Positions 9,650-38,363 of a stretch of DNA of 64,000 nt are shown in pieces (position 1 is the stretch's first letter; every line of letters starts with the position of its first letter). A program made the translations under genes and the position numbers. The stretch spans positions 267,777 to 331,776 of IMG/VR virus record IMGVR_UViG_3300047445_000186. One strand, written 5' to 3'. The notes beneath the pieces were generated by a model, which made no database searches, was not told the origin of the DNA, and saw only the letters and a program-made list of their open reading frames with translations.

Positions 9650-12440
9650 CTCATACATCAGCGCCGTTCAAGACTACGACTCAGATAAGATCCTTATCTG
9701 GGAGCGTCCGATTGAGGGCGGGGATCGAGTTCTGCGGATGATCGATCCACCACGGTACTTCTACGTTCCAGACGAGAACGGGTCGTACACGGGGATCGAT
9801 GGTGTGAAACTGAAGAAGCTCGTGTTCGACTCTGAAGACGAGATGAACGCGGCAATCAAGAGCAATTACAAACGATACGAGAGCGACGTGCGTCCTCTCG
9901 CTCGTGCTCTGATGGACGAGTATTACGGTCGGCCAACGCCGATCATTCACTTCGCGTTCCTCGACATTGAAGTCGATTACTCGTCGAAGCTCGGCTTCAG
10001 CTCACCAGAAAATCCGTACGCACCGATCAACGCAATCACGATCTATCAGTCGTGGACTCAGAAATATCTGACGTACGCGGTCCCTCCAAAGGGTTACAAG
10101 GACCAAGAGAACTTCCAAGCGAAGATCAAGGCGATGTGGGAAGAGCACAAGCTTGGCTTCGAGCCGAACGTGGTGCTCTGCAACAGCGAACGCGATCTGC
10201 TTCTGTACATGCTCGGCGATCTGGAAGATGCCGACATCATCAGCGGTTGGAACTCCGAGTTCTTCGACTTGCCGTACATTGTGAAGCGCCTTGAGCGAGT
10301 CCTCGGCAAGAAGGCGCCTGCGCATCTGTGCTTCAAGGGTGCTGGTGCGCCTAGAGAACGGCAAGTGAATCGTTTCGGTTCGCCTGCGATCGTGTTCCAA
10401 CTGAAGGGCCGCTCGCATCTGGACTACTTGGATCTGTTCAAGAAGTTCACGTTCGAAGGCCGGACCTCGTATTCCTTGGGGAACATTGCAGCAGAAGAAC
10501 TTGACGTTCCGAAGCTGGATTACGACGGCACTCTCGAGCAGTTGTACAACAACGACTTCGTTCACTTCGTCACGTACAACGCACGAGACGTTGAAGTGCT
10601 TGTGAAGCTCGACGTGAAGTACAAATTCATGCAGCTCGTGAATCAGATGGCGCATGAGAACACCGTGCCATTCGAAGCGATTCTCGGCACGGTGCGATAC
10701 GTTGAGACTGGGATCATGAACCGTGCGCACCACGTGCATAATCTGATCGCCACGAACAAGGTGAACGTCCAGAAGGACAATGAGAAGGTCGAAGGAGCGA
10801 TCGTGATGACCCCACTCGCGGGTCTGTGGGAATGGTTGGCATCAGTGGACATCACGTCACTGTACCCGTCCGTTATCCGCGCGCTGAACATGTCGATCGA
10901 AACGTTCATTGGTCAGTTCTACGACGAAGAGCGTGCATGGCGTGGTATCACGAACATGGACGACAACGTCTGGTCGCTCGCGAGTCGAGACGGCGATCTG
11001 GAAATGACTGGTGCCCAGTGGCACGCTCTGATCCGTCAGAAGAACTGGGCGCTCTCGGCGTTCGGCACTGTGTTCGATCAGTCGAAGCCAGGGATGGTCG
11101 CTGATACCCTCACGTTCTGGTTTGCTGAACGTAAGCGTCTCCAAGCAGAGAAGAAGAAGTACGGTAAGCTTGCAAAGGCCGAGACCGATCCAGTGAAGAA
11201 GCTCGAGTACGAGAAGCTCGAGGAACAGTACGACCTGTTGCAGCTCACGAAGAAGATTCAGTTGAACTCGACTTATGGTGCCTTGCTGAACGAAGCATTC
11301 CGCTTTGGCCGGCGAGAAATCGGTGCATCAGTTACGGGTACGGGCCGTCAGATCACTCTGCACATGGCGCAGACTATCGGTGAGTTGATCACTGGCGCTC
11401 CAGTGAAGATGGAGAAGCGGTACGCTGCGACTAAGGCTGGAAAGCACGTCGCTGGTGAACTGATTTCGAGAGCGCGCCGCGATTCGAACTGGGCGTTCCT
11501 TGAGGAACTCTCAGAGAAGCCAGTGACGTTCCTTGACAAGAACGACGAAGATGCTGAAGTGTCGGGTGCAGTGTACTGGACGCAAACGCCAGAGATCATT
11601 TACGGCGACACTGACTCGTGTTACTTCATGACGAACGGCACGGATTACGACTCGGCTGTAGAGCTCGCAGACGCGATCGCATCGGAAACGAATGCGTCGT
11701 TCCCAGAGTTCATGGCTCGCTCGTTCAATTGCACTGATGGTCGTGAAACACTGATCAAGGCAGCTCGTGAAGTCGTCGCTGAGCGTGGAGTGTTCTTGCT
11801 TGCAAAGAAGAAGTACACGTTGAAGGTCGTGAATCTCGAGGGTGCCGATCTGCGCGAGAAGCCGAAGCAGAAGTCGATGGGTTCTGAAATCAAGAAGGCC
11901 GACACACCGAAGCCGGTGCAGGAATTCTTGAAGAACATGATGAACCTTGTGCTTGACGGCAAGGAGTACGCAGAGCTTGAGACGTACGTGAACGCGCATC
12001 GTGGTTCTCTGATCCACAAGACGAATGACCTATTGGCTCTTGGTTCCGCGAAGCAGATCAACAACTTGGATGCGCTGTACGCCGAATGGCAGCGCACAGA
12101 GAAGATCGGTCGCGGTAAGTGCAAGCTTCCAGGTCACGTGCGAGCAGCGGTGAACTACAACGAGCTTATCCTCGCGTACGACGAAGGCGCAAAGAGTCTT
12201 CGAGCTGGTGACAAGGGCGTGATCTTCTATCTGCGGAAGAACCCGTACAACTTCAATTCGATCGCGTTCCCAGCAGATGCGATGCGTCTTCCTGAATGGT
12301 TCGTTGAGAACTTCCAGGTTGACATGAAGAAGACTGAAGAGAAGCTGATTGACAACAAGATCGAGGGTATCTTTGATGCACTTGGTTTTGATCTCCCAAC
12401 CCCGCAGACTGCGTTCTTGAACACGGTTTTCACGTTCTGA
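9636..12440 (+). CDS. Family B DNA polymerase (T4 gp43-like)
   Basis: Exonuclease motifs DIE, GWNSEFFDLPY, YNARDV; polymerase motifs DITSLYPS, KIQLNSTYG, YGDTDS, KKKY. Confidence 0.98.
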   Translation: MSAANSYISAVQDYDSDKILIWERPIEGGDRVLRMIDPPRYFYVPDENGSYTGIDGVKLKKLVFDSEDEMNAAIKSNYKRYESDVRPLARALMDEYYGRPTPIIHFAFLDIEVDYSSKLGFSSPENPYAPINAITIYQSWTQKYLTYAVPPKGYKDQENFQAKIKAMWEEHKLGFEPNVVLCNSERDLLLYMLGDLEDADIISGWNSEFFDLPYIVKRLERVLGKKAPAHLCFKGAGAPRERQVNRFGSPAIVFQLKGRSHLDYLDLFKKFTFEGRTSYSLGNIAAEELDVPKLDYDGTLEQLYNNDFVHFVTYNARDVEVLVKLDVKYKFMQLVNQMAHENTVPFEAILGTVRYVETGIMNRAHHVHNLIATNKVNVQKDNEKVEGAIVMTPLAGLWEWLASVDITSLYPSVIRALNMSIETFIGQFYDEERAWRGITNMDDNVWSLASRDGDLEMTGAQWHALIRQKNWALSAFGTVFDQSKPGMVADTLTFWFAERKRLQAEKKKYGKLAKAETDPVKKLEYEKLEEQYDLLQLTKKIQLNSTYGALLNEAFRFGRREIGASVTGTGRQITLHMAQTIGELITGAPVKMEKRYAATKAGKHVAGELISRARRDSNWAFLEELSEKPVTFLDKNDEDAEVSGAVYWTQTPEIIYGDTDSCYFMTNGTDYDSAVELADAIASETNASFPEFMARSFNCTDGRETLIKAAREVVAERGVFLLAKKKYTLKVVNLEGADLREKPKQKSMGSEIKKADTPKPVQEFLKNMMNLVLDGKEYAELETYVNAHRGSLIHKTNDLLALGSAKQINNLDALYAEWQRTEKIGRGKCKLPGHVRAAVNYNELILAYDEGAKSLRAGDKGVIFYLRKNPYNFNSIAFPADAMRLPEWFVENFQVDMKKTEEKLIDNKIEGIFDALGFDLPTPQTAFLNTVFTF

Positions 12441-17530: not shown

Positions 17531-18178
17531 GTGCACCACATGTACAAGACCCTTGCGGCGCTCGGCGTCGTTCTAGCTCTTGTTTCCTCAGCCGCCTATC
17601 AAATGGTCGGCCTTCTCCCTGAGCCAAAGGCCAATACGGTCCTGGCTGAGAAGTCATCTGTTATCCTCGGTGGTCAGGCCGCCGTTCTAGTCCCCGACAA
17701 TCTGTCGACGAGTCAGTACCAAGTGCTGAACACGGCGTACCAGATTGCAAAAGCGGATGGACACAAAAACCCTGAACTTGTTCAGGGGATTCTGCTCCAA
17801 GAATCCAAAGCCGGTGCGATGAACTCGTACAAGGTCGCCGGGAATAAAGGCGACGAATACTACGGCCTCGGCCAGATCAAGCTTGCGGCCACACGCGACG
17901 TGATGGCGACCTTCCCCGCTCTGTGGGCGAAATACAAGTTCCAAACGAAAACCGACGACGAGCTGAAAGCGAATCTGATCTTGAACCAGACGTTCAACAT
18001 CGAGATCACGTCGAAGTACCTTAAGATGTTACAGGAGCGATACGGTCTTTCCGGCCGGCAACTCGTGAATGCTTATAATCGTGGTCCAGGCGGCGTGAAG
18101 AACGTGGACTCCTCGTTCCATTACGCCATTGGTGTCGAAAAGAACATCGCGAACATGCGAAAGAAGAAGGACAGTTAA
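17531..18178 (+). CDS. Lytic transglycosylase (SLT/lysozyme-like) with N-terminal signal/SAR-like helix
   Basis: ILLQES catalytic Glu, YGLGQI, AYNRGPG; hydrophobic N-terminus; TATAAT at ~17478. Confidence 0.85.
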   Translation: MHHMYKTLAALGVVLALVSSAAYQMVGLLPEPKANTVLAEKSSVILGGQAAVLVPDNLSTSQYQVLNTAYQIAKADGHKNPELVQGILLQESKAGAMNSYKVAGNKGDEYYGLGQIKLAATRDVMATFPALWAKYKFQTKTDDELKANLILNQTFNIEITSKYLKMLQERYGLSGRQLVNAYNRGPGGVKNVDSSFHYAIGVEKNIANMRKKKDS

Positions 18179-18612
18179 TGCCAGCAAAACTGAGACCGAG
18201 GTTGATCATGCAGGACTCGTGCTGCGTTTGCGGCAGCGAGAACATCGAGACGGTCGTGAGCGATCGCTCGTCATGGGGAAAGGTTCGCCTCGGTTGCCAG
18301 CACACTCGGTGCAACGACTGCGGCTTTGAAGCTACGAGCGGCGAGCAGAGCGCGTACAACGATAAGTGCGAGGTCGTTGAGATCTGCGGACCGTTCAAGC
18401 CGATCGAGATCGGCACCGTGCACAACGCGAACGCGTACTTCGATTGGAGCTGGTTAGGATGCGGCTTCGGCCAGCTCTCGTTCAGCAAGGACAAGGAAAC
18501 TGGCGAGCTAACATGCATGAACGAGTGCATGGGTCGCGAGGCGGTCCGGAAGCTGCTGCACGCGTTCGCTGATCACTTGGCAGACAACGTTCGTCTTCTC
18601 GACGAGCGGTGA
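18178..18612 (+). CDS. Zn-ribbon-containing hypothetical protein
   Basis: CCVC...CNDC; WLGCGFGQLSF..NECMGRE C-terminal domain. Confidence 0.6.
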   Translation: MPAKLRPRLIMQDSCCVCGSENIETVVSDRSSWGKVRLGCQHTRCNDCGFEATSGEQSAYNDKCEVVEICGPFKPIEIGTVHNANAYFDWSWLGCGFGQLSFSKDKETGELTCMNECMGREAVRKLLHAFADHLADNVRLLDER

Positions 18613-18724
18613 ATATAGAGGCATTAGATGGCAAATAGCGCGCACAAAGTTCCTGGGGACGTTCTGACCCGCGTCCTCGTTGCAGTGGTGATCGGTATCT
18701 GGTGCTTCGTGCTCTACCGAGCTT

Positions 18725-18793
18725 TGTAACAGATTCCTGCGCCGTTACAGATTGACCCGGCGGATGTTGTACAATCACCCATCGACAACGAAA
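18725..18793 (+). promoter_or_regulatory. Early promoter module (TGTAAC..GTTACAGATT..GGATGTTGTACAAT..CCATCGAC)
   Basis: Closely related modules at 38989-39062 and 62738-62796, each before a small-ORF cluster. Confidence 0.75.
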
Positions 18794-18804
18794 CGGAGTA
18801 CAGC

Positions 18805-19023
18805 ATGAACGGAACCGCAGCAAAGTTTGTTCGCTTCGAGCGCAAGAACGGGAAGCTCGCCCTCGTGTACGATGTGATGAACAAGACCGGTGAATATGTG
18901 ATGGCACAGTTCACCACGTCCCCGCAGTTCCGCTCGATCGGAGCAGCTCGGAAAGCGATCGTCCGCGTCGATGCAGCGCTCGCCAAGACCGGCGCTTTCC
19001 CGAACTGCTGCGCCTGGTTCTGA
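18805..19023 (+). CDS. Early small hypothetical protein
   Basis: SD GGAG; first gene after early promoter. Confidence 0.7.
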   Translation: MNGTAAKFVRFERKNGKLALVYDVMNKTGEYVMAQFTTSPQFRSIGAARKAIVRVDAALAKTGAFPNCCAWF

Positions 19024-19024
19024 A

Positions 19025-19387
19025 ATGACAGCACGATACGTTGAAGTCGATCGTGCTGCTTTCCGCGCAGCACTCGAATCCGCCGGGTTCACGCCCGACC
19101 CCGAAGCAGTCGGAGAGCTGGTGTACGTTCGCCAGCACCACAAGGATCCGACGATGTTCGTGAAGATCTTCACGTCGCTTCCGCTGAACGCCGGGAACGC
19201 TCGCCCACCGGGTGCCGACGCGATTCGCGTCCTGCTGATCTTCAAGAACAGCCAGACCGGAAAGTCTGGCTGCCTATACAAGACCTCCCGCGTGTACCGG
19301 ACTGGTTCCCAAGAAGCCGTCATTCGTCGCACGATCGATCGCGCTCGCGAAGCGTACGGCGAAGGCAATCGTCGAGCCAATCGCTGA
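19025..19387 (+). CDS. Early hypothetical protein
   Basis: MTARYVEV...KIFTSL...ARPPGADAIRV..RVYRTG; start at 19025. Confidence 0.7.
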   Translation: MTARYVEVDRAAFRAALESAGFTPDPEAVGELVYVRQHHKDPTMFVKIFTSLPLNAGNARPPGADAIRVLLIFKNSQTGKSGCLYKTSRVYRTGSQEAVIRRTIDRAREAYGEGNRRANR

Positions 19388-19409: not shown

Positions 19410-19433
19410 AAGCCCGGTTCATCCGGGCTTTTT
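19410..19433 (+). terminator. Rho-independent terminator
   Basis: AAGCCCGG-TTCAT-CCGGGCTT followed by TTT. Confidence 0.85.
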
Positions 19434-19460
19434 GGGCTTTAGAGTCATACTTCTCGCTGC

Positions 19461-19501
19461 TAAATAGTCCTCAGAGGGCCACGTCGTGGCCGCAGAGGAC
19501 T
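19461..19501 (+). promoter_or_regulatory. Late promoter plus RBS-sequestering hairpin (cassette 1)
   Basis: TAAATA; AGTCCTC pairs with GAGGACT around an inner GGCCAC/GTGGCC stem. Confidence 0.75.
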
Positions 19502-19503
19502 CC

Positions 19504-20727
19504 ATGACATCTCCGGTCGATACATCCGTCAAATCTTTCGATAGCACCATGCTCGGTGCTCCAGCCCTGAGTGGTACTGCTGGCACCACAATTGGCGTGC
19601 TTGATGCTTGCTTGGTGAACGGGTTCGACACACGTGCTGCTTCATCTATCGTTGTTTCAGGTGGTGTGGCTACGGTGAGCTACTCGGGTGCAGTGCACTC
19701 AGCTCGGTTGAACAGCGTTATTCTCGTGTCTGGCGTGACTGACATCACGTCGTTGAATGGTGAACAGAAGATCACGGCAGTCGGTTCTGGCTTCGTGAAG
19801 TTCGCGACAGCGGCCTCGCCAGGTACCGCAACCGGCACGATCTCGTTTAAGATGGCTCCACTCGGATGGGTGAAGCCCTTCAATGGTACCAATATCGGCG
19901 TGTACCAGTCGAGTGACATCACGTCAACAAAGTGCTACCTTCGCGTTGACGATACTGGTACCCAGACATGCCGCGTTATGGGGTACGAAACCATGACTGA
20001 CGTGAACACTGGACTTGGTGGATTCCCGCTGTCTGGTCAGATTCTTGGTCCTGTCACAGGTGGTGGTTGGTGGTACAAGAGCGCTCAGGTCAACTCGACC
20101 CCAGTTGTGTGGTCTATTCACGGTGACGGCAAGATCTTCTACATCAACATTCAGATGGGAACTAGCACGAACGCCTCGTATCAAATGACGTCTGGGCGTG
20201 TGTTCGGTGATCCAATTCCGTACAGACCTGGCGGCGATCCATACTGCTGCATTTTGAACTATGCCACTGCATCTGGTGGTATGGCCGGTGGTGTTGGAAA
20301 TACGTACAGCTCATCTGCAAATTGCTCATTCGCGACACCTCGCGATTTCACTGGAATTGGATCCGCAGTTGGGAACTTCTTGATGCAGTTCGGAATCCCA
20401 GTAGGCTCTAACTCAAATTCAGGAATTACGAACTTGGCTGGGGCATTCCCATCGTACATCGATGGAAGTCTTTGGTTGTTCCAGAAATTTCTTGCCGCAA
20501 CTTCAACTGGCATGCCGCGGGCGCTCATGCCAGGTCTTTATATTTGCGGGCAGTCTAGCATCTATAACAACTTTAAGCAGGGCGATACGACCCCAGGCAC
20601 AGGTGCTCTTGCTGGTCGATGGCTACGTGCAGCAACGTCAAATGATGATGCAACCGTGCCGAACACGGCAAGCACAACGGCGAACACAGGTATCATTTTC
20701 TTTGATGACACTGGGCCGTGGAGATAA
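19504..20727 (+). CDS. Tail-fibre-associated protein, paralog A1
   Basis: MTSPVDTSVK...LDACLVNGF...APLGW...LRVDD...FFDDTGPWR; paralogous to 22994 and 37160. Confidence 0.75.
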   Translation: MTSPVDTSVKSFDSTMLGAPALSGTAGTTIGVLDACLVNGFDTRAASSIVVSGGVATVSYSGAVHSARLNSVILVSGVTDITSLNGEQKITAVGSGFVKFATAASPGTATGTISFKMAPLGWVKPFNGTNIGVYQSSDITSTKCYLRVDDTGTQTCRVMGYETMTDVNTGLGGFPLSGQILGPVTGGGWWYKSAQVNSTPVVWSIHGDGKIFYINIQMGTSTNASYQMTSGRVFGDPIPYRPGGDPYCCILNYATASGGMAGGVGNTYSSSANCSFATPRDFTGIGSAVGNFLMQFGIPVGSNSNSGITNLAGAFPSYIDGSLWLFQKFLAATSTGMPRALMPGLYICGQSSIYNNFKQGDTTPGTGALAGRWLRAATSNDDATVPNTASTTANTGIIFFDDTGPWR

Positions 20728-20730
20728 ACA

Positions 20731-22944
20731 ATGGCTGCGCATCGATACTGGCGCATCACTGGTCTTGAGGCCTTTGCAGGTGCAGATCTTGAACTGAGTG
20801 AATTTCAGCTCCTGAACGGTGCCACTCGCGTTGATGCGTCTGCAACGCTCACATGCTCAAACTCACCAGCAATTGGCGCAGTTGCGAACATCCAAGATAA
20901 CAATCTGAGCACGTCTGCGTACTGGCAAAAGGCATCTCTTGTCGGGCTTACGCTGAACTGGGACTTTGGTGGATCGCCGACTCAGGTGAATGATATTCGG
21001 ATTGCTGGTGGTGACAGCGCACTGACGTTCCCGCTGTATGCTCGGCTAGAGTACTCGGACGATAACGTTGCGTGGATCGTGCAGTACACGTACGGTGGTA
21101 TCACCTGGCCAGGCCCGCGCACGCTGACTTCATCTGGGACATTCTTGACTAATGGCGGGGTATGCACCTGCTTGTTGCACTTCGACGGTGTGAACGGTGC
21201 TACCACAACAACTGACAGCAGCTCAATCGGGGCGACCGTCACGTTCAACGCGATGGCAATTTCCACGACCTTGTCGATCTATGGTGGCTCTTCACTGTCT
21301 CAAACTGGAGCTCGCGGGTACATTAGTCTACCAGCTAATACTGCGTACGTGCCAGCGGGCGATTTCTGTATCCAGGGCTGGTTCCGAAATGCTGCAGCGG
21401 GTGGCGGCAGTACCCTTGTTTTGTACGTCAAGGGATCAATTTCGGTCTATTCTTACTTGGTATTTGTGAATGGCAACGGGTATCTGCAGGCCAACATCTT
21501 CGGCACCGGCGGCAGCGTTGCGCTGCTCGCCCCTTCACTATGGGCAACAAATACCTGGTGTCATGTTGCGGTGACTAGACAAGGTAACGTTTTTAGACTG
21601 TTCGTGAATGGTTTAATTGTAAGCATAATCACGGCGCCGAGTTCATTTGGCGCCTTAGTCGCTAGCGCAGGTCCCCTCAGTCTCGCTAATGACACGGCGG
21701 GGACATATGGTTGGGGCGCTGTTCCTGGCTATATCGACGAATTTCAAATCATTAATGGCGCGGCAATTTACACGCAGGCCTTTACTCCGCCAGCCGCCCC
21801 CTCAACTGCTACCGCAATTGACCAAGTTCAAGGTATTCTTCAGAACCTCGGCGGTGGCCGCGTAGCGAGCGGGAACAATCTCGTTCTCCCAAGCGTGATT
21901 GGGAGTTCCCTGGCGTCATATGGCGCGAGCAGTCAACCGCCGAGCGCGTTCATTCGTGGTCGAAGAGACTACGTGTACAACGCGAATGGATACCAAGGTC
22001 TCATTGACGGGATCGTCGATTACAAGGCGACCCCGTTTAATGTGCCTGTCTCGCGGCGCGTCCGGCTTCACCGACAGGCAGATGGTTTGTTGATCCGCGA
22101 AGTGTTCAGTGATCCAATCACTGGCGAGTACAAGTTTGATTACATTGACGAGACACAGAAATACTTTGTGTGCAGTCTCGATCACACTGGCGCTTTCCGT
22201 GCCGTGATCAGCGATAATCTGACACCGACAATTATGAGTGGTGCACCGATCGCGTATCCACCTGCGCACTACAGAAGCGTCGGTCCTGTGGCAACGTACC
22301 AGGCCGGGCCGGGCACTACAGTTGTCCCTAGCACTCCTACTGGGATGACTGTTGGTGATCTCATGATTGCCAGCATTGCGAACATGATCTGTACCGTGAC
22401 GCCTCCAGTAGGATGGACATTGGTGAATTCGTACAGCATGAATAATGGCGCAAACACCCAACAGGTTATGCTAAGTGTGTACAGCAAGTATGCGACCTCT
22501 GCAGACGTTGCTATTGCGGCGCATACTTTCAGTTTCAGCGCCACGAGTACACAGGGCGCAACTGGAGTTATCACCGCGTTCTACAACCCAGCAGGGCTTC
22601 CAGTTGTTGTTGACACGTCTGCAGTGAACGGGTATTTGGTCGGGAATGCATCCACCCCACCACAGCAGTCGCAGACGATGATTTTCACGCCAATGCGAGT
22701 AACGAACAATAATTCGCACATCATGCTCGTTACCGCTCAAGCGTTCATGGGTACAACGTTCAATGCAGGCACAGGTCTGATTCTCAGAGCAGGAAGTACA
22801 GCAGGCGGGATCGGTGTCTGCACAGGTACCAGCAATCTGCAAAGCGGGTATGAGAACGGCGTTGGGTACAATGGGTACATGATGACATGGAATAACGTCG
22901 CGACGCAGCCGGCGATCGGCATTGGTCTGATTTTGACGACATAA
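20731..22944 (+). CDS. Tail fibre / receptor-binding protein B1 (discoidin-like HRYWR + LamG + variable C-terminus)
   Basis: HRYWRI; LLHFDG..DFCIQGW..WCHVAVTR..GYIDEF LamG; VSRRVRLHRQ module. Confidence 0.78.
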   Translation: MAAHRYWRITGLEAFAGADLELSEFQLLNGATRVDASATLTCSNSPAIGAVANIQDNNLSTSAYWQKASLVGLTLNWDFGGSPTQVNDIRIAGGDSALTFPLYARLEYSDDNVAWIVQYTYGGITWPGPRTLTSSGTFLTNGGVCTCLLHFDGVNGATTTTDSSSIGATVTFNAMAISTTLSIYGGSSLSQTGARGYISLPANTAYVPAGDFCIQGWFRNAAAGGGSTLVLYVKGSISVYSYLVFVNGNGYLQANIFGTGGSVALLAPSLWATNTWCHVAVTRQGNVFRLFVNGLIVSIITAPSSFGALVASAGPLSLANDTAGTYGWGAVPGYIDEFQIINGAAIYTQAFTPPAAPSTATAIDQVQGILQNLGGGRVASGNNLVLPSVIGSSLASYGASSQPPSAFIRGRRDYVYNANGYQGLIDGIVDYKATPFNVPVSRRVRLHRQADGLLIREVFSDPITGEYKFDYIDETQKYFVCSLDHTGAFRAVISDNLTPTIMSGAPIAYPPAHYRSVGPVATYQAGPGTTVVPSTPTGMTVGDLMIASIANMICTVTPPVGWTLVNSYSMNNGANTQQVMLSVYSKYATSADVAIAAHTFSFSATSTQGATGVITAFYNPAGLPVVVDTSAVNGYLVGNASTPPQQSQTMIFTPMRVTNNNSHIMLVTAQAFMGTTFNAGTGLILRAGSTAGGIGVCTGTSNLQSGYENGVGYNGYMMTWNNVATQPAIGIGLILTT

Positions 22945-22953
22945 CGGGAGGGC

Positions 22954-22992
22954 TAAATAGTCCTCAGAGACCACTGCAGGTCTGAGGCTATT
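22954..22992 (+). promoter_or_regulatory. Late promoter plus RBS-sequestering hairpin (cassette 2)
   Basis: GCTAAATAGTCCTCAGAG identical to cassette 1; AATAG(T)CCTCAGA pairs with TCTGAGGCTATT. Confidence 0.75.
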
Positions 22993-22993
22993 C

Positions 22994-24199
22994 ATGACAT
23001 CTCCAGTAGATACATCCGTAAAATCATTCGACTACTCAATGTTGGGAGCGGCTGCCCTGAGCGGCACGGTCGGCTCGTTGTTGCCAATTCTTGACCAATG
23101 CCTGGTGAATGGGTTTGACACTCGAGCAGCGTCAAGCATTGTCGTTTTTGGCGGGATCGCGACAGTAAGCTACACCGGCATTACGCACTCTGCGCGTTTG
23201 AACTCGGTTATTCTCGTGACTGGTGTGACTGACCTTACGGCCCTGAACGGAGAACAGAAGGTCACCGCCGTCGGCTTCGGTTTCATTAAGTTCGCAACCA
23301 GTGTTGCGAACGGTACCGCGACCGGTACGATCTCGTTCAAGATGGCTCCACTTGGATGGGCGATTGCGCAGACAGGTACTAATCTTCGCGCGTACAAATC
23401 GACCGATGTTACATCGACCGGCTGCATTCTTCGTGTCGACGACACCGTTGCCACGTCGTGCCGTGTCGTTGGATACGAAAGTATGACCGACATCAATACT
23501 GGTCTTGGCGCATTCCCGACTGCTTCGCAACAGCCTGGCGGCGGGTACTGGGTGAAGAGCATTACGGCCTCGGCGGGTACTGTCCTCTGGTCTATCCATG
23601 GGGATGGGAAGGTGTTCTACCTGAATGTTCAGCCTGGTAGCGTTTCTGGCGCAGGTTTTCAGATCACTTCTAATCGTATGTTCGGAGACATTATTCCGTT
23701 CAAACCGGGTGGTGATCCTTATGCGTGCGTAATGAACTACTCGATCACGTCAACGATTGGCGCGATGCACGACGCCGGTGTTGGTGGGTCGGCTGTCACT
23801 CAGTTCGCTCAACCACGCGACTTCACGGGGCTTGGATCAGCGGTGATCTCGTTTATCTACCCGTACAACGGCACGACTCTGAACACAATTTCCGGCATTA
23901 CCTCGATTGCAGGTCCATTCCCATCTCAGGTAGATGGTGGCATTTGGTTGAGCTCAAAGTATCTGAACACCACCACCAGCGTTGGCATGCGTGGTCAGCT
24001 TCCAGGCGTATTGCACTGTGGTCAGAGCGGGGTATGGGCCTCGTTTAAAATGGGTGACACGACGCCCGGCTCTGGCCCCCTCGCCGGGCGTTCGCTGCGC
24101 GCTACAACAGCAGGGCACGATACGACAGGTAGTAACACCACCTCGTCAACTGCAAACACCGGGATCATGTTCTTCGACGACACTGGGCCTTGGCGATAA
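22994..24199 (+). CDS. Tail-fibre-associated protein, paralog A2
   Basis: Same termini and core motifs as A1. Confidence 0.75.
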   Translation: MTSPVDTSVKSFDYSMLGAAALSGTVGSLLPILDQCLVNGFDTRAASSIVVFGGIATVSYTGITHSARLNSVILVTGVTDLTALNGEQKVTAVGFGFIKFATSVANGTATGTISFKMAPLGWAIAQTGTNLRAYKSTDVTSTGCILRVDDTVATSCRVVGYESMTDINTGLGAFPTASQQPGGGYWVKSITASAGTVLWSIHGDGKVFYLNVQPGSVSGAGFQITSNRMFGDIIPFKPGGDPYACVMNYSITSTIGAMHDAGVGGSAVTQFAQPRDFTGLGSAVISFIYPYNGTTLNTISGITSIAGPFPSQVDGGIWLSSKYLNTTTSVGMRGQLPGVLHCGQSGVWASFKMGDTTPGSGPLAGRSLRATTAGHDTTGSNTTSSTANTGIMFFDDTGPWR

Positions 24200-24202
24200 G
24201 CA

Positions 24203-27200
24203 ATGGCTACGCACAGATATTGGCGCGCTAAAAATCTTCAGGCGTACGGCGCAACCGGCCTAGACATCACTGAGTACCAGCTTTTTGTTGGCAGCACACG
24301 TGTTGACGGCCCGGCGACGCTCACCTCCAACATCGCGCCATCAACTGGTTCATTGTCATATCTGCAGGACGGGCTAGCTACGAACAGCGCAATCTGGCTA
24401 GCAGCTGATGTTCCCAAACTCGTGCTCTCGTGGGACTTTGGTTCGACATCCGGTAACTGGGTTGATGTGAATGACATTCAGCTCGGTGGTGGCGCGCTTC
24501 GGCAGAATTTTCTGGCGTTCTCCACTCTTCAGTACTCGGATGATGCCAGCACTTGGACAGATGCATTCATTAGCACTACGAACGGCTATGTTGCGGGTGC
24601 GTACGCGTGGCCTGGAAGTTTTACGGCCACCACGAGTAGACCATTCTCGTACAATAGTCTGACAGTGTTGCTTCACGGTGATGGTACTGACGGTGGGACC
24701 ACGTTCACGGATAGCTCAACGAACGCATTCACGGTCACCCCCACAGCTACAACAACAAGTGCAACGCAGAAAAAGTTTGGTACGACTGCGCTTTCGTTCA
24801 ATGGCGCGACCTGTAAGCTGTTGATCGCGCACAACAATGCGTTGGTTCCGAGTGGAGATTTCTGCATTCAGTGTTACGTATGGGTTGCTTCTGCGACGGC
24901 TGCGACTCATCGATTCATCGTGAACAAATCGATCTCAAGTGGAGTCTGTCCATACGCATTTGCTGTGATGTCGACAGGTGTGTTGTCTGCTAATTCATAC
25001 AACGCGGCTGGCACGTCGATGGTGAACTTCACCGCGACTCAGTTAATCACAGCTCAGACTTGGACACACGTAGCGTTCACACGTCAGGGCTTGATTTACC
25101 GTATTTTCATGAATGGTCAAATCGTTGCGCAGGCAACGGCGCCATCAACTGGCGCGCTGTACAACAACAATACGCACCCGATGTGTATTGGGAACGTGTC
25201 AGACAGCATTTACCCTATGTTTGGAACAGGTGGTACCGGGTACATTGACGAGTTCTCATTTGATGCGAACAACGCTGTGTACACTGCGCCATTCATTCCA
25301 CCTGCGGCTCCAGGCTCAGGTGGTGGAATCGTGCTTACGAACAATTTCGCGATCTCATCTCCGACTGAGCCGTCTACGGTAGGAAATGGTGTATCATCGT
25401 ATGGCGTATCAGCGGTGTCAATTGCGCCGGAAACGGTCGCAGATGTTATCGCCATGTCAGCGCCAACAGTGTACGGTGTAGCTCCACCTCCAGTTTTCTT
25501 TGGTGTCAGCACGACATTGATGCTCTCATATGGTGCTGGACTGCGAGCGCCTAATAACACGCGTGGTCGAAATGATTTCGTCACTGGTGTTCTCGGCTCT
25601 GGCGTCGGACGAATCGACGGTGTTGTGCAAGTTCCTGGTACGCCAAATCAGCCAGTGAAGCGTCGTGTTCGTCTGTACAGGCAAGAAGACGGATACCTTG
25701 TGCGCGAGGCCTGGAGTGATTCAAGCACTGGGGCGTTCTCATTTGACTACGTTGACGAGAAACAGCTGTACTACATCTGCGCATTTGACCACACGAATGC
25801 GTTCGTTGGGCTGATCGCTGACAACTTAACGCCATCCCTGCTTGAAACTTCTACTGTTGACGCATACGCAGGTGCTCTGAAGAGACTGATCACGATCACT
25901 GGCGCAGGTGGTGCAGGTACAGGATACGCTATGTTGTTCAAGATTGGGGAGAGCAGCGGTTCTGCCGGCTCCGATTTCAACCTTGAAGCTGTTACAACGA
26001 CGTTCCCACTTGATAAGAACATCCCTGGCGATGTGCAGTTCACTGACGTCAGTGGAAGCCCGCTTCCACAGTGGGTCGAGCAAGTCACCGGGACGGCACC
26101 GAATCGTGTTGCATGGTTCTGGGTTAAAGTTTCGGCCGATCTGAGTACAACGCAGTCGATTTACTGCACGTACCGGAATGGTATGAGCACCGCAAGCAAT
26201 GGCAATACCGTGTTCCTGTTGTTCGATGACTTCGATGACGGCACGCTCGATACTGGAAAGTGGTCGAACGTCACTGGATCAGGCAGTTATGTAATCTCCG
26301 GTTCTGAATTCGTACTCACCGGTACTGGTGTTGGTCGCGCGCTTTATTCGGCCACGACGTTCGGTGATGGAATGGAAGTGGTTGGTAAGGTCGGACCATC
26401 GGCTACCTCGCTGAGCTACAACGGTAAGTTCGGTTTCGAAACGCAGTACATCTTCCAAAATGACTGGGACAGCCAAGGATCATCGGAAGTTGTAGTTGGC
26501 CCATCGACTAAGACACAACTTGACGCGCGCTATCAGACCACGTATTACAGAATGCGAATCCGGCGTGCGGGTGGCGCAGGTAGCATGTTGGTCAATGACG
26601 TGGTGAAGCATACACAAGGTTCTGGGATTGGGACTTCATCTGTGCCAGTTTGGCTGATGAACGTGTATGACGCCACTGTTGCCGGTAAGGTTGATTGGAT
26701 CGCAGTCAAGAAGTACATGCTCACCGAGCCTACGTACTACTCGGCCGACACCTCCATTCCTGCGGCGACTACCGTGATCAACATGACTTTCGATACCGGG
26801 AACGGTTCGACTACGTTCACGGATACTGGTTCACAAGCATCAAGTTGGCAGATCGGTACGGGCGCGGTTCAGTGTTCGACGACAGCGGTTCTTGAAGGCG
26901 TTTCATCGCTCTTTGTTCCTGGTGGTGGCTTCGCCTATCTGTACACTACAGCGTACTCCGCGAACATGCTTCCAGCTACCTCAGACTTCTCGCTGAAATT
27001 CAAGGCGCGTTCGTCGTCATGGCTGCGCTTTGACGCTTCTGGGTGCTATTTGATCTCGATTCAGGGCGCGGTAGGAAATGGAGCAGACACGCAATTCGCG
27101 ATCGCAACGAATCTGAATACATATCTGGCATTCGCGTATAGTGACGGCACGACGCGTTCAGCAGTGACTGGGACTACTCCTGTCCCGGTGAATGTGACCG

Positions 27201-27394
27201 TGTCATTCGAGTTCAAGCGAGTAGGCAGTACACTCTCATTGCTGATGAACGGCGTGCTTCAATGTTCTGCTACTCTGTCTGGCGCGTTGAACGTGCCGTC
27301 TGGTCAGCAGTGGCGAATCGGTGCACCGGCCGGTGCACAAGGCGGTGCATTTAACGGGATGTATTTCGACTCGCTCTCGCTTACTGTTGGTTAA
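24203..27394 (+). CDS. Tail fibre / receptor-binding protein B2 (HRYWR + LamG + RRVRL module + DUF2341-like + LamG-like)
   Basis: MATHRYWR; LLHGDG LamG; VQFTD..LPQWVEQ..FWVKV..SNGNTVFLLFDDF is DUF2341-like. Confidence 0.78.
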   Translation: MATHRYWRAKNLQAYGATGLDITEYQLFVGSTRVDGPATLTSNIAPSTGSLSYLQDGLATNSAIWLAADVPKLVLSWDFGSTSGNWVDVNDIQLGGGALRQNFLAFSTLQYSDDASTWTDAFISTTNGYVAGAYAWPGSFTATTSRPFSYNSLTVLLHGDGTDGGTTFTDSSTNAFTVTPTATTTSATQKKFGTTALSFNGATCKLLIAHNNALVPSGDFCIQCYVWVASATAATHRFIVNKSISSGVCPYAFAVMSTGVLSANSYNAAGTSMVNFTATQLITAQTWTHVAFTRQGLIYRIFMNGQIVAQATAPSTGALYNNNTHPMCIGNVSDSIYPMFGTGGTGYIDEFSFDANNAVYTAPFIPPAAPGSGGGIVLTNNFAISSPTEPSTVGNGVSSYGVSAVSIAPETVADVIAMSAPTVYGVAPPPVFFGVSTTLMLSYGAGLRAPNNTRGRNDFVTGVLGSGVGRIDGVVQVPGTPNQPVKRRVRLYRQEDGYLVREAWSDSSTGAFSFDYVDEKQLYYICAFDHTNAFVGLIADNLTPSLLETSTVDAYAGALKRLITITGAGGAGTGYAMLFKIGESSGSAGSDFNLEAVTTTFPLDKNIPGDVQFTDVSGSPLPQWVEQVTGTAPNRVAWFWVKVSADLSTTQSIYCTYRNGMSTASNGNTVFLLFDDFDDGTLDTGKWSNVTGSGSYVISGSEFVLTGTGVGRALYSATTFGDGMEVVGKVGPSATSLSYNGKFGFETQYIFQNDWDSQGSSEVVVGPSTKTQLDARYQTTYYRMRIRRAGGAGSMLVNDVVKHTQGSGIGTSSVPVWLMNVYDATVAGKVDWIAVKKYMLTEPTYYSADTSIPAATTVINMTFDTGNGSTTFTDTGSQASSWQIGTGAVQCSTTAVLEGVSSLFVPGGGFAYLYTTAYSANMLPATSDFSLKFKARSSSWLRFDASGCYLISIQGAVGNGADTQFAIATNLNTYLAFAYSDGTTRSAVTGTTPVPVNVTVSFEFKRVGSTLSLLMNGVLQCSATLSGALNVPSGQQWRIGAPAGAQGGAFNGMYFDSLSLTVG

Positions 27395-35926: not shown

Positions 35927-36340
35927 ATGCTCCTGAATGAAATCAAACTTGGTACCAAATCTGACCCTGAAGCCCTGAAGGCTTTCATGGCTGACATGCG
36001 CGCGAACACTGAAGCGCATCCATTCGCTCGTGGAATGGTAATTCATAATGACTCCGTCGGGGTTGAGGTATCAATCTTTGACGGCAAGATTCACCTGAGC
36101 TCGATCATGAGCTTTGTTCAGAAGAACGCTGGTGAAGCTTCGAAGACTCTGAAATTCCTGACTGATCTTGCTGACAAGCACCAGGTGATCATGGATCTGG
36201 CCGTTTCGCCGATCAAGAACGCCGGCGCTCGTGAAGGTAAGAGCCTTACGAAGGCGCAGCTCACGGCCTGGTACGGTAGGTACGGTTTCAAGAAGGCACG
36301 TGGCGATTACATGGAGCGCCCACCTGGCGCCGCTGCGTAA
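35927..36340 (+). CDS. GNAT-fold acetyltransferase-like protein, late
   Basis: IHLSSI..QKNAGEASKTL (motif A-like), LADKH, LTAWYGRYGF; TAAATA 35899-35904; starts MLLNE. Confidence 0.65.
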   Translation: MLLNEIKLGTKSDPEALKAFMADMRANTEAHPFARGMVIHNDSVGVEVSIFDGKIHLSSIMSFVQKNAGEASKTLKFLTDLADKHQVIMDLAVSPIKNAGAREGKSLTKAQLTAWYGRYGFKKARGDYMERPPGAAA

Positions 36341-36368
36341 ATAGAGCTGCACAATTAGGAAATTTCAA

Positions 36369-37156: not shown

Positions 37157-37159
37157 TAA

Positions 37160-38362
37160 ATGACATCTCCAGTCGATACCTCAGTTAAGTATTTCAGCTC
37201 GAATATGCCGAACGCTCCAGTGCTGAGCGGCACTGCCGGCGCGCTGATTGCATTGCTGGACGCTTGTCTCAAGGACGGCTTCAACTCGATTACACCGACA
37301 TCGATTGTGGTCGCTGGAGGTATCGCTACTTTGAGCTGGGCCTCTGGTACGTTCGCGGCACTGCCAGACTCGGTAGTGCTGATTGCTGGCGTGACCGACA
37401 AGACCGGCCTGAACGGTGAGCAGAAAGTGCTCACCAAGAGCGCGCTGTCAATCACGTTCGCAACTGCTGAGACTGCTGGCACTGCAACGCTCTCCGCTGC
37501 CACGGTGAAGATCGCGCCGCTTGGATGGCTGAAGCCTCAATCAGGTACCAACCTTGCAGCGTACCAATCAAGTGATTCACTGTCTACCAAGATGCTACTG
37601 CGTGTTGATGACACCGGAACCACGATGGCCCGCGTTGTCGGATACGAGTCCATGACCGATGTGAACACTGGAGTGAACCCATTCCCTTCAGCGGCTCAGA
37701 TGTCAGGTGGCGGTTATTGGTCGAAGAGCGTGAATGCGAGCGCCGCTACCGTGAATTGGTCCTTGCATGGCGATGGAAGAATCTTCTATCTTAACGTTCA
37801 GCCAGGATCGTCGAACGCTTTGGTGAATCAAATTTGTTCAGGCAAGGTCTTTGGAGACGTGATTCCGACCAAGCCGGGCGGAGACCCTTATGCCTGCTGC
37901 CTGAACTACGCCCAGACCGCAACGATTGGTAACCAGACCGATGGCGCGTTCGGCGCGTCTGGCGACTTCAAGTTCGCCATGCCTCGCGATTTCACAGGAT
38001 TGGGGTCTTCAGTGATGTACGGCGCGTGGACTTTGACTGGAAATGGCGGAGTTTCAGGTCTAGCGAACGCCCTTGGCTCGTTCCCTTCCCCAATTGACGG
38101 CGGCCTTTGGCTGTGCAAGAAGTTCCTGTACACTTCTATTCTCAGTTCCCCTCGTGCCATTTTCCCAGGCCTCCTGAACGTCGTCCAGTCTGGCGTTTGG
38201 AATTCCTTCAAGCAAGGAGACTCAGTGCCGGGGTCTGGGATTTACGCGGGTAAGAACCTGATGGCGGCAACGACATCTGACAACTCGACGGCGTTCACCA
38301 CAGCTTCTACTGCAGCTAACACTGGCATCATCTTTTTCGACGTCACAGGCCCTTGGAGATAA
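37160..38362 (+). CDS. Tail-fibre-associated protein, paralog A3 (no HRYWR partner)
   Basis: MTSPVDTSVK...FFDVTGPWR. Confidence 0.75.
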   Translation: MTSPVDTSVKYFSSNMPNAPVLSGTAGALIALLDACLKDGFNSITPTSIVVAGGIATLSWASGTFAALPDSVVLIAGVTDKTGLNGEQKVLTKSALSITFATAETAGTATLSAATVKIAPLGWLKPQSGTNLAAYQSSDSLSTKMLLRVDDTGTTMARVVGYESMTDVNTGVNPFPSAAQMSGGGYWSKSVNASAATVNWSLHGDGRIFYLNVQPGSSNALVNQICSGKVFGDVIPTKPGGDPYACCLNYAQTATIGNQTDGAFGASGDFKFAMPRDFTGLGSSVMYGAWTLTGNGGVSGLANALGSFPSPIDGGLWLCKKFLYTSILSSPRAIFPGLLNVVQSGVWNSFKQGDSVPGSGIYAGKNLMAATTSDNSTAFTTASTAANTGIIFFDVTGPWR

Positions 38363-38363
38363 G

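What the first reader, a model, noticed from the sequence alone, without database searches (positions are those of the whole stretch)
19459..27394. Tandem duplicated promoter-A-B tail-fibre cassettes with swappable receptor-binding domains
Seen: two units, each made of the identical 18-nt GCTAAATAGTCCTCAGAG promoter, a hairpin, a ~400-aa A gene (MTSPVDTSVK...TGPWR), a 3-nt gap and a B gene (MAxHRYWR, LamG, RRVRL module). The B genes then diverge completely: B1 has a ~230-aa C-terminal domain, B2 has DUF2341-like and LamG-like domains. Conserved blocks alternate with variable ones. Inference: a modular multi-receptor system in which recombination between conserved blocks can reshuffle host range, with no invertase or reverse transcriptase visible in this window.
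Basis: partly seen in the sequence, partly recalled or inferred. Interest (0 to 1): 0.65.

Follow-up and report, generated by a model that had tools for sequence, protein, structure and literature searches.

The report
Duplicated tail-fibre gene pair, jumbo phage
A 332-kb soil (rhizosphere) jumbo phage carries two diverged side-by-side copies of a two-gene host-adhesion module also found in small temperate phages, probably giving it several receptor specificities; nothing suggests that the copies recombine or switch.

Summary
Two units lie in tandem: an identical 18-nt motif, a hairpin, an A gene, a 3-nt gap and a B gene. A1/A2 are 61% identical. B1/B2 are 38% identical over about 515 residues, then unrelated.

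The window is the end of a 331,776-bp jumbo myovirus from rhizosphere metagenomes, related to Ralstonia phage RsoM2USA.

- **A** is homologous to AXL1 gp46, a virion protein of a type-IV-pilus-dependent siphophage. It has the fold of the JBD30 tail-fibre-forming proteins gp47/gp48 (Z 18.3).
- **B** is a chain of lectin-like domains: discoidin-like, LamG, a beta-sandwich (RRVRL), then optional extra domains.
- **The A-B pair** is a conserved single-copy unit in the tail-tip module of many Comamonadaceae/Burkholderiales siphoprophages. Here it sits as a lineage-specific insertion inside the replication gene block, and its base composition matches the phage.
- **The 18-mer** starts with (C/G)TAAATA(G/C), a motif enriched upstream of about 50 genes genome-wide, so a T4-late-like promoter is plausible.
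- **Domain shuffling** is visible across the B family.

In-genome recombination between the two cassettes is not supported. The longest shared exact match is the 18-mer, nucleotide identity is 35-74%, and the genome has no reverse transcriptase or serine invertase. Contigs from four runs and a second assembly show no variants. A third A copy (37160-38362) was missed.

The parts
19410..19436 (+). Terminator-like GC hairpin plus T-run (GAAGCCCGG-ttcat-CCGGGCTTTTT) that closes the upstream genes just before cassette 1
   Evidence: Read directly from the sequence. The simple terminator scan did not list it.
19459..19476 (+). 18-nt motif, copy 1. The first half, GCTAAATAG, matches the genome-wide (C/G)TAAATA(G/C) promoter-like motif. 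The second half, TCCTCAGAG, forms the 5' arm of the hairpin.
19466..19501 (+). Hairpin 1. The outer stem AGUCCUC/GAGGACU covers the Shine-Dalgarno sequence of A1; the inner stem is GGCCAC/GUGGCC.
   Evidence: -25.2 kcal/mol, z -1.0: present but not exceptional
19504..20727 (+). A1, 407 aa. An AXL1-gp46-like / JBD30-gp47/48-like fibre-forming protein with an inserted beta-barrel (residues 41-120).
20731..22944 (+). B1, 737 aa. Domains: discoidin-like N-domain (residues 1-135), LamG (about 145-345), disordered linker (374-419), RRVRL beta-sandwich (about 420-505), and a rare C-terminal domain (about 510-737).
22952..22969 (+). 18-nt motif, copy 2, in the 49-nt B1-A2 spacer
22956..22992 (+). Hairpin 2. 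The inner stem sequence differs from hairpin 1, but CCUCA again pairs with UGAGG, the Shine-Dalgarno sequence of A2.
   Evidence: -22.3 kcal/mol, z -1.7
22994..24199 (+). A2, 401 aa, sister paralogue of A1
24203..27394 (+). B2, 1063 aa. It has the same scaffold as B1 (N-domain, LamG 209-352, RRVRL about 470-560), then DUF2341 (609-689) and a C-terminal LamG-like domain.
37160..38362 (+). A3, 400 aa, a third A paralogue. It has no B partner and no 18-mer, and lies in another operon about 10 kb downstream.

Best explanation
The region holds two old, diverged tandem paralogues of a portable two-gene host-adhesion module.

**What the proteins are.** A is a fibre- or arm-forming baseplate protein. 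B is a multi-lectin adhesin that follows A after 3 nt.

**Origin.** The module is typical of the tail-tip region of temperate siphophages of Comamonadaceae/Burkholderiales. An ancestor of this rhizosphere jumbo myovirus captured it into a variable cargo spot between a 215-aa gene and the primase gene. It was then duplicated there. A third A copy lies 10 kb further on.

**Expression.** Each unit has its own copy of the phage's (C/G)TAAATA(G/C) promoter-like motif. The same motif precedes the tail-sheath gene, so the units are probably expressed with virion genes even though they sit among replication genes.

**Most likely function (inferred, not shown).** Two sets of accessory fibres are made in parallel. 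They share the A scaffold and the B core but end in different carbohydrate- or surface-binding domains. This would widen or secure adsorption (multivalent host recognition).

**What it is not.** It is not a switching or shuffling device. Diversity arose by domain exchange on evolutionary time scales across the family, not by recombination between the two copies in this genome.
For: **Anatomy and paralogy:**

**Genome type**
- The genome is one 331,776-bp virus contig with a tail-sheath gene.
- Its polymerase is 47% identical to that of jumbo phage RsoM2USA.

**Insertion**
- RsoM2USA has the 215-aa-gene homologue directly followed by primase.
- Two closer relatives (63% polymerase identity) carry a different gene there, a GH1+RmlD fusion.
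- None of these relatives has A.

**A**
- It hits phrog_9998 (E 6e-63) and phrog_9600 'tail assembly protein' (E 1e-25).
- hhalign to AXL1 gp46 gives 99.8% probability over 287 columns. gp46 was found in purified virions of a pilus-dependent phage (PMC9206674).
- The AF2 model has pLDDT 91. Its best solved match is the JBD30 baseplate fibre proteins: Foldseek E 7e-7; VIA Z 18.3, 263 residues, rmsd 3.5 A.
- The role of gp47/gp48 is described in PMC11445458.

**A-B as a unit**
- In 78 other IMG/VR phage contigs A is single-copy within 6 kb either side of each A gene.
- 73 of the 80 loci carry the RRVRL module.
- The commonest A-B gap is 3 nt, and median B length is 486 aa.
- Only A and B of the siphophage tail-tip genes occur in the jumbo genome and in a satellite-like island.

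**Promoter:** 51 of 89 TAAATA sites lie within 80 nt upstream of gene starts, against 5% expected. These include the sheath gene and the 2960-aa gene.

**Age and selection**
- Cassette GC3 is 0.51-0.61, against 0.63 for the genome and 0.74-0.83 for prophage homologues.
- In A1/A2 alignment columns 1-120, amino-acid identity (76-83%) exceeds nucleotide identity (66-74%).
- A1 and A2 are sisters (SH-aLRT 99).
Against: - No data show that A or B is in virions of this phage.
- The genes lie in the replication block, not in a structural block.
- The phage is a myovirus and lacks detectable homologues of the other siphophage tail-tip proteins that flank A-B in the prophages. How A-B would dock is therefore unknown.
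- The link to JBD30 gp47/gp48 is by fold only. The PHROG differs (phrog_687), and hhalign gives 21% and 1%.
- The quick B tree does not place B1 and B2 as sisters. Support is weak and one origin is not excluded, so the history of the B halves is unresolved.
- The promoter call rests on motif enrichment alone.
Confidence: 0.62

Rival explanations
1. A recombination-driven host-range shuffling system. On this view, exchange between the conserved blocks of cassettes 1 and 2, or with A3, regularly creates new A/B combinations within phage populations.
For: - Conserved and variable blocks alternate in the proteins.
- Modules have clearly been exchanged across the family.
Against: - Between the cassettes, DNA identity is 44-74% in A and 18-63% in the shared B core (lower still in the unrelated C-terminal parts). 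The longest exact match is 18 nt and the next is 14 nt. From general knowledge of homologous recombination, this is likely too short for efficient exchange.
- There are no long inverted repeats.
- The genome has no reverse transcriptase or serine recombinase.
- Contigs from four rhizosphere runs are identical, with no joints.
- A second assembly has the same three A copies at the same spacing.
- Contigs cannot show rare variants, so low-frequency events are not excluded.
Confidence: 0.06
2. The cassettes specifically bind type IV pili. On this view A forms lateral arms that grip the pilus, as in JBD30. B adds secondary cell-surface binding once pilus retraction has brought the phage to the cell.
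For: - A has the fold of JBD30 gp47/gp48, whose arms embrace the pilus.
- The sequence relatives of A (phrog_9600) include proteins of pilus-dependent phages: AXL1 and DLP3/DLP4, and Xylella Sano and Salvo.
Against: - Fold similarity does not carry receptor specificity.
- The pilus-contact residues were not compared.
- A carries an extra barrel domain absent from AXL1 gp46.
- The host of this phage is unknown.
- In JBD30 the arm is a heterodimer of two paralogues, not A plus a lectin protein.
Confidence: 0.22
3. The cassettes are non-structural cargo, not virion parts. Possibilities are a remnant of a mobile element or satellite that landed in a cargo hot spot, or lectin-like proteins used inside or on the infected cell, for example for superinfection exclusion.
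For: - They lie among replication genes at a spot that holds unrelated cargo in relatives.
- The other siphophage tail-tip partners are absent.
- The closest outside A homologue sits in a small integrase/primase/capsid island.
Against: - All five genes are intact and compositionally ameliorated.
- They are preceded by the motif that also precedes the sheath gene.
- Every characterised relative of A is a virion or tail protein.
- A 160-kb Variovorax phage has the same pairing of an A-like gene with a lectin-rich gene, also at a 3-nt gap.
- No integrase or repeats flank the insertion.
Confidence: 0.1

Closest known systems
Stenotrophomonas phage AXL1 gp46 ('tail assembly protein', phrog_9600) followed by gp47 ('tail fiber protein')
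   Same: - gp46 aligns with A over 287 columns (hhalign 99.8%, E 5e-30).
- It is directly followed by a fibre gene after a 2-nt gap.
- gp46 is virion-associated by mass spectrometry, and the phage needs type IV pili (PMC9206674).
- gp47 shows a faint RRVRL-like stretch (hhalign 22%).
   Different: - gp46 lacks the roughly 80-residue barrel that A carries at residues 41-120.
- gp47 lacks the discoidin-like and LamG domains of B.
- The pair is single-copy, in a 64-kb siphophage, and sits in the tail module.
Pseudomonas phage JBD30 tail-fibre-forming proteins gp47/gp48 (PDB 8rk3, phrog_687)
   Same: - The fold matches over nearly the whole protein (Z 18.3, 263 of 317 residues, rmsd 3.5 A).
- They form lateral baseplate arms used for the first contact with the host (PMC11445458).
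   Different: - There is no usable sequence similarity.
- JBD30 uses two paralogues as a heterodimer, encoded straight after the tape measure gene.
- Here one A-type protein is paired with an unrelated lectin-domain protein.
A-B pair of Comamonadaceae/Burkholderiales temperate siphophages (Acidovorax ACF1/ACPWH, Curvibacter PCA1, Ralstonia RS138, many Variovorax and Polaromonas prophages)
   Same: - They have the same two genes in the same order, usually with the 3-nt gap.
- A is 35-57% identical, and B has the same scaffold.
   Different: - There they are single-copy and part of the operon tape measure - 131 aa - about 1190 aa - A - B - 134 aa - 630 aa.
- B usually ends right after the RRVRL module (median 486 aa).
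- GC3 is 0.74-0.83.
- Here the pair is duplicated, has its own promoter motif, carries long C-terminal additions, and sits in a jumbo myovirus.
Phages with several receptor-binding proteins in parallel (general knowledge, not tested here: for example phi92, CBA120, SP6, K1-5)
   Same: Several adhesins with a shared attachment part and different distal domains are encoded side by side.
   Different: Those systems use trimeric tailspikes or fibres with conserved N-terminal adaptor domains. Here the unit is a two-gene pair of another fold family.
Invertible or diversity-generating tail-fibre systems (Mu Gin / P1 Cin, Bordetella BPP-1 DGR)
   Same: They provide alternative C-terminal receptor-binding parts for one fibre scaffold.
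   Different: The genome has no recombinase or reverse transcriptase, no inverted repeats, and no template repeat.

Membership tests
phrog_9998 / phrog_9600 (AXL1 gp46-like 'tail assembly protein') | Full-length sequence match to the family profile | tested here: met
   - A1 hits phrog_9998 at E 5.7e-63 (residues 6-406 against profile positions 3-401 of 401) and phrog_9600 at E 1.3e-25. A2 is similar.
- hhalign to AXL1 gp46 gives 99.8%.
phrog_9998 / phrog_9600 (AXL1 gp46-like 'tail assembly protein') | Encoded in the tail-tip module downstream of the tape measure gene and followed by a fibre-like gene | tested here: not met
   - In the window the genes lie between replication genes. The second half of the feature is met: a B gene follows each of A1 and A2.
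- The whole feature is met in the prophage and phage relatives.
phrog_9998 / phrog_9600 (AXL1 gp46-like 'tail assembly protein') | Protein present in virions | not testable with these tools
   This is known only for AXL1 gp46 (PMC9206674). No proteome exists for this metagenomic phage.
JBD30 gp47/gp48 tail-fibre-forming proteins (phrog_687) | Shared fold over the whole protein | tested here: met
   - Foldseek E 7.4e-7 and 4.7e-5.
- VIA Z 18.3, rmsd 3.5 A, 263 residues aligned, well above the next rows.
JBD30 gp47/gp48 tail-fibre-forming proteins (phrog_687) | Sequence-family membership | tested here: not met
   - gp47/gp48 fall in phrog_687, which A does not hit.
- hhalign probabilities are 21% and 1%.
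JBD30 gp47/gp48 tail-fibre-forming proteins (phrog_687) | Two adjacent paralogues that form a heterodimer | tested here: not met
   The gene after A is B, which is unrelated in fold and sequence.
JBD30 gp47/gp48 tail-fibre-forming proteins (phrog_687) | Binds the type IV pilus | not testable with these tools
   This needs a host and binding assays.
LamG / concanavalin-A-like lectin domain (PF13385) in B | Match above Pfam's gathering score | tested here: met
   B1 scores 62 bits and B2 63.5 bits, against a cut-off of 27.6. Foldseek matches to solved lectin-like jelly rolls reflect this generic fold only.
DUF2341 (PF10102) in B2 | Match above Pfam's gathering score | tested here: met
   60 bits against a cut-off of 23.4, at residues 609-689.
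F5/8 type C (discoidin) domain for the B N-terminal domain | Match above Pfam's gathering score | tested here: inconclusive
   - B1 scores 18.6 bits against a cut-off of 28.2.
- 22 of 34 family members match below threshold (best E 6.7e-5).
- A profile search against PDB hits lactadherin C2 domains at E 0.01.
Invertase-switched tail fibres (Gin/Cin type) | Serine recombinase gene and flanking inverted repeats | tested here: not met
   - The 331,776-bp genome has no PF00239 match.
- The longest inverted repeat in the region has 24-nt arms at 75% complementarity.
- Tyrosine recombinases were not searched.
Diversity-generating retroelement | Reverse transcriptase plus template and variable repeat | tested here: not met
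   - No PF00078 match in the genome.
- No near-identical repeat pair in the B genes.
T4-type late promoter (TATAAATA) | Short A/T-rich -10-like element enriched just upstream of late (virion) genes | tested here: met
   - TAAATA: 51 of 89 sites lie within 80 nt upstream of gene starts. TAAATAG: 20 of 28. The expected share is 5%.
- The motif lies mostly 20-35 nt before the start codon (60 nt for the sheath gene). It precedes the sheath gene and the 2960-aa gene.
- The exact TATAAATA is absent from the genome.
T4-type late promoter (TATAAATA) | A gp55-like late sigma factor, and a mapped transcription start | not tested
   No accession for the factor was at hand, and no RNA run holds this phage.

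The most novel reading that the evidence does not exclude
A-B may be a self-contained 'plug-in' adhesion module that can dock on unrelated virions. Only these two genes of the siphophage tail-tip set travel together. They are found in temperate siphophages, a 160-kb Variovorax phage, a 332-kb jumbo myovirus, and a small integrase/primase/capsid island that looks like a phage satellite. If so, phages and satellites of soil Burkholderiales would exchange host range as a two-gene unit regardless of tail type.
Probability: 0.15. Interest if true: 0.7.

Novelty: new variant of a known kind. Interest (0 to 1): 0.4.

Why it matters
**Scale of the family.** A has more than 900 uncharacterised relatives, and a family of B partners goes with it. 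Both get a concrete, testable role here: an accessory fibre or arm plus a lectin adhesin of Burkholderiales phages.

**Movement between phage types.** The region documents transfer of a host-recognition module from small temperate siphophages into a jumbo myovirus, at a cargo hot spot inside the replication block.

**Practical use.**
- For phage biology and biocontrol of plant-associated Burkholderiales, it points to which genes to swap or delete when testing host range.
- The (C/G)TAAATA(G/C) motif gives a handle on gene regulation in an uncultured jumbo-phage lineage.

**Limit.** This is not a new kind of diversity-generating mechanism.

Tried and rejected
1. **Nucleotide search.** Megablast of the 8.2-kb region against 50,697 phage records found no match.
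2. **A-B complex prediction** (A1 with B1 residues 1-515, using my own alignments). It scored 0.00 and gave no verdict. This is not evidence for or against binding.
3. **B1 C-terminal domain.**
   - No Pfam or PHROG hit.
   - tblastn found only a weak Rhodococcus phage hit.
   - The word search found nothing beyond the phage's own fragment.
   - The exhaustive HMMER search found 68 weak relatives, only one of them below E 1e-10 apart from the phage's own fragment, mostly 230-300-aa proteins without names.
   - Atlas structure neighbours are unnamed viral proteins and domains of bacterial surface proteins.
   - AF2 confidence for this domain is low, so its fold stays open.
4. **P0124 (507 aa, 100% identical to B1).** It looked like a truncated B1 variant. 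It is an identical 1,710-bp contig fragment covering window 21415-23124, read from an internal Met.
5. **PDB sequence search with the A profile** gave nothing meaningful.
6. **Reverse transcriptase and serine recombinase:** absent.
7. **Contigs of four runs laid on 19459-25458:** no differences and no joints. Contigs cannot show rare variants, and coverage in three of the runs was patchy.
8. **Hairpin significance.** There are only two copies, and the z-scores are -1.0 and -1.7. The structure is noted but not claimed as proven.
9. **Careful maximum-likelihood tree of A.** It did not finish in the time allowed, so the quick tree is reported.

Full report
**1. The observation**

The 18-mer GCTAAATAGTCCTCAGAG occurs exactly twice in the window, at 19459 and 22952. 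Allowing up to four mismatches, it occurs nowhere else in the whole genome. Each copy is followed by a hairpin and then a gene pair:
- A1 at 19504-20727 (407 aa) and B1 at 20731-22944 (737 aa).
- A2 at 22994-24199 (401 aa) and B2 at 24203-27394 (1063 aa).

Both A-B gaps are 3 nt. A1 and A2 are 61% identical over their full length. B1 and B2 are 38% identical over the first 515/561 residues and unrelated after that. Pfam finds LamG in both B proteins, and DUF2341 plus a second LamG-like stretch in B2. The description is therefore correct.

Two points were missed:
- A third A paralogue, A3 (37160-38362), is 51-53% identical. It lies in another operon, without a B gene and without the 18-mer.
- The conserved blocks are conserved as protein only. 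Nucleotide identity between the cassettes is 44-74% in A and 18-63% in the shared part of B. The longest exact match is the 18-mer itself, followed by 14 nt.

**2. Where it lies**

The window is the last 64 kb of a single 331,776-bp virus contig. IMG/VR classes the record as linear, and CheckV estimates it 94% complete. A tail-sheath gene is present, so this is a myovirus. The family B DNA polymerase at 9636-12440 is 47% identical to that of Ralstonia jumbo phage RsoM2USA, and 32-34% identical to those of XacN1, Xoo-sp13 and the Stenotrophomonas jumbo phages. The stretch occurs in nine rhizosphere metagenome runs.

The cassettes sit inside a replication block. Upstream are the polymerase, clamp, exonuclease and kinase genes. 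Downstream are primase (27448), DnaB helicase (28615) and an exonuclease (35032).

Synteny shows that the cassettes are an insertion:
- In RsoM2USA the homologue of the 215-aa gene (17531-18178) is directly followed by primase.
- Two closer IMG/VR relatives (63% polymerase identity) carry a different 3.7-kb insert at that spot. It includes a 750-aa GH1+RmlD fusion ORF.
- None of these relatives has an A homologue in the sequence held.

A terminator-like hairpin at 19410-19436 closes the upstream genes.

**3. What A is**

A has no Pfam family. It hits phrog_9998 (E 6e-63) and phrog_9600 'tail assembly protein' (E 1e-25). The word search found more than 900 relatives. The named ones are mostly Variovorax and Polaromonas proteins annotated as hypothetical.

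In isolated phages, tblastn finds A in Acidovorax ACF1/ACPWH, Curvibacter PCA1 and Ralstonia RS138. The C-terminal two thirds also match 'tail assembly proteins' of Stenotrophomonas, Xylella, Xanthomonas and Pseudomonas siphophages.

One of these relatives is characterised:
- AXL1 gp46 aligns with A over 287 columns (hhalign 99.8%). A carries an extra roughly 80-residue insert.
- gp46 was detected in purified virions, and AXL1 needs type IV pili (PMC9206674).

The AlphaFold model of A1 is confident (pLDDT 91.3, pTM 0.92). Its only strong solved match is the JBD30 baseplate structure, PDB 8rk3:
- Foldseek gives E 7e-7 for chain G and 5e-5 for chain K.
- VIA-align gives Z 18.3, rmsd 3.5 A and 263 aligned residues for chain K. 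The next rows reach about Z 11 and cover only the 80-residue barrel at residues 41-120.
- By length, chains K and G correspond to gp47 (318 aa) and gp48 (307 aa).
- These are the 'tail fibre forming proteins' whose heterodimers build three lateral arms that embrace the type IV pilus (PMC11445458).

The link is by fold only. gp47/gp48 belong to phrog_687, and hhalign gives 21% and 1%.

**4. What B is**

The AF2 model (mean pLDDT 70) and the family alignment give this layout:
- A well-predicted N-terminal domain at residues 1-135. It is discoidin-like below threshold. 22 of 34 members touch PF00754, and a profile search hits lactadherin C2 domains at E 0.01.
- LamG at about 145-345.
- A disordered linker at 374-419.
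- A beta-sandwich holding the RRVRL motif at about 420-505.
- In B1, a poorly predicted, rare C-terminal domain at 510-737.

Foldseek matches of the model to solved lectin-like jelly-roll domains reflect the generic LamG/ConA fold and nothing more.

**5. The A-B pair as a unit**

In prophages and phages the order is: major tail protein, tape measure, a 131-aa gene, an approximately 1190-aa gene (or two genes in its place), A, B, a 134-aa gene, a 630-aa 'tail protein', then lysis genes.

Eighty IMG/VR loci were found with the A profile:
- 78 come from contigs of about 7-57 kb, and each holds a single A copy within 6 kb either side.
- 73 of the 80 loci carry the RRVRL module.
- The commonest A-B gap is 3 nt, in 25 of 49 measurable cases.
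- Median B length is 486 aa. Typical B proteins therefore end right after the RRVRL module.
- Only the jumbo phage has more than one copy.

Of the siphophage tail-tip genes, only A and B have homologues in the jumbo genome. The same holds for the closest outside A homologue (55-57% identical). It sits in an island of about 11 kb with integrase, primase and a capsid gene, which looks like a satellite.

A 160-kb Variovorax phage, V45v66, shows a similar arrangement. It has an A-like gene followed after 3 nt by a 726-aa protein. That protein has CarboxypepD_reg-like, discoidin-like and LamG parts, and more LamG proteins flank it.

**6. Modularity**

Across the B family the central slot holds LamG, SPRY, or, in P0137, a domain related to the B1 C-terminal domain. 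The B1-type domain also occurs as a C-terminal add-on behind an SPRY centre, in P0131 of Acidovorax cavernicola and in P0142.

In a quick tree of the scaffold blocks, LamG and SPRY types are intermixed, and B1 and B2 are not sisters. Support is weak and a single origin is not excluded. A1 and A2 are sisters (SH-aLRT 99). A3 branches apart from them within the same clade (this too is a quick tree, because the careful search did not finish).

'Swappable domains' therefore holds on the scale of the family.

**7. Is it a shuffling system in this genome?**

The evidence says no:
- DNA identity between the cassettes is probably too low for homologous exchange.
- There are no long inverted repeats.
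- The genome has no reverse transcriptase or serine recombinase.
- A second assembly of the same phage from another sample has the same three A copies at the same spacing.
- Contigs of four runs laid on 19459-25458 are identical, with no joints or indels. Contigs cannot show rare variants.
- Cassette GC3 is 0.51-0.61. That is close to the genome's 0.63 and far from the 0.74-0.83 of prophage homologues, so the genes have resided here for a long time.

**8. The 18-mer**

Its first half contains (C/G)TAAATA(G/C). Genome-wide, 51 of 89 TAAATA sites lie within 80 nt upstream of a called gene start in the sense orientation, against 5% expected. For TAAATAG the count is 20 of 28. The sites lie mostly 20-35 nt before the start codon. 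They precede the sheath gene and the 2960-aa gene, among others. This resembles the T4 late promoter TATAAATA (established knowledge). The exact octamer is absent from the genome.

At about 70% background identity, 18 identical bases in a row would be expected with a probability of roughly 0.002. The motif is therefore under constraint.

Its second half provides the CCUC that pairs with the Shine-Dalgarno GAGG in both hairpins, even though the inner stems differ. With T4-like spacing, transcription would start at about 19472. The CCUC arm would then be left out of the promoter-proximal mRNA. On that inference the full hairpin would form only in read-through transcripts. The hairpin energies are not exceptional, and with two copies no covariation test is possible.

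**9. Verdict**

The feature is real and is best read as two (plus one) old paralogues of a portable fibre/adhesin gene pair. A jumbo myovirus acquired the pair from the siphophage gene pool of soil Burkholderiales, and the copies are probably expressed late and in parallel (confidence about 0.6).

- Shown: the anatomy, the homologies, the insertion, the family-wide modularity and the motif enrichment.
- Inferred: virion location in this phage, A-B contact, receptor specificity and timing of expression.

The complex prediction returned no verdict and is listed only among the things tried. No step had to be referred.

Noticed in passing
window 35927-38990: A3 sits in a tightly packed operon:
- 35927-36340, preceded by ATAAATAG.
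- 36369-36953.
- A 67-aa ORF at 36953-37156, whose start overlaps the previous stop (TAATG) and which joins A3 as TAATAAATG.
- A3 itself.
- After a 1-nt gap, a 208-aa ORF (38364-38990) with no Pfam or PHROG hit.

That 208-aa ORF occupies the place that B has in the cassettes.
   Followed up: partly
L004:2210-13161 (Logan contig of SRR29775028): A small island carries an integrase, a RepB-primase/DUF3987 gene, a capsid (Phage_cap_E) gene, several small genes, and then A (407 aa, 55-57% identical to A1-A3) and an SPRY-type B. It looks like a phage satellite carrying its own adhesion pair. No other tail gene of the prophage set is present.
   Followed up: partly
L015:17884-20136 and L016 (IMG/VR relatives, 63% polymerase identity): At the same spot between the 215-aa gene and primase, these relatives carry a 750-aa ORF that fuses a GH1-like part with an RmlD (dTDP-4-dehydrorhamnose reductase) domain. 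The site is a cargo hot spot.
   Followed up: partly
whole genome G000; in the window for example 15905, 30398, 35897, 43690 (-), 62723 (-): A (C/G)TAAATA(G/C) motif lies mostly 20-35 nt upstream of about 50 genes. It is probably the late promoter of this phage lineage. Two sites elsewhere in the genome (about 9,960 and 191,010) share a near-identical 30-nt context.
   Followed up: partly
L102:6166-12425 (Variovorax phage V45v66, PV558790): An A-like gene (431 aa) is followed after 3 nt by a 726-aa protein with CarboxypepD_reg-like, discoidin-like and LamG parts. The pair is flanked by a 596-aa and a 316-aa LamG protein, making a lectin-rich fibre cluster in a 160-kb phage.
   Followed up: partly
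window 40772-62695, minus strand: A run of large genes:
- An 804-aa protein built of short repeats (no family hit).
- A 147-aa protein (phrog_644).
- A 535-aa M23-peptidase/endolysin-like protein.
- A 553-aa fibre/decoration-like protein.
- A 1601-aa protein (no hit).
- A 2960-aa ORF (not scanned against the libraries).

These are probably virion or ejection proteins.
   Followed up: no
G000:C1:204734-205594, minus strand (outside the window): Another LamG-containing gene, 28-29% identical to the LamG part of B1/B2 and of prophage B proteins.
   Followed up: no
window 18178-19387: Two small ORFs (144 aa, cysteine-rich; 138 aa) lie between the conserved 215-aa gene and cassette 1. They have no family hit and no homologue in RsoM2USA or the IMG/VR relatives, so they may belong to the inserted segment.
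   Followed up: partly
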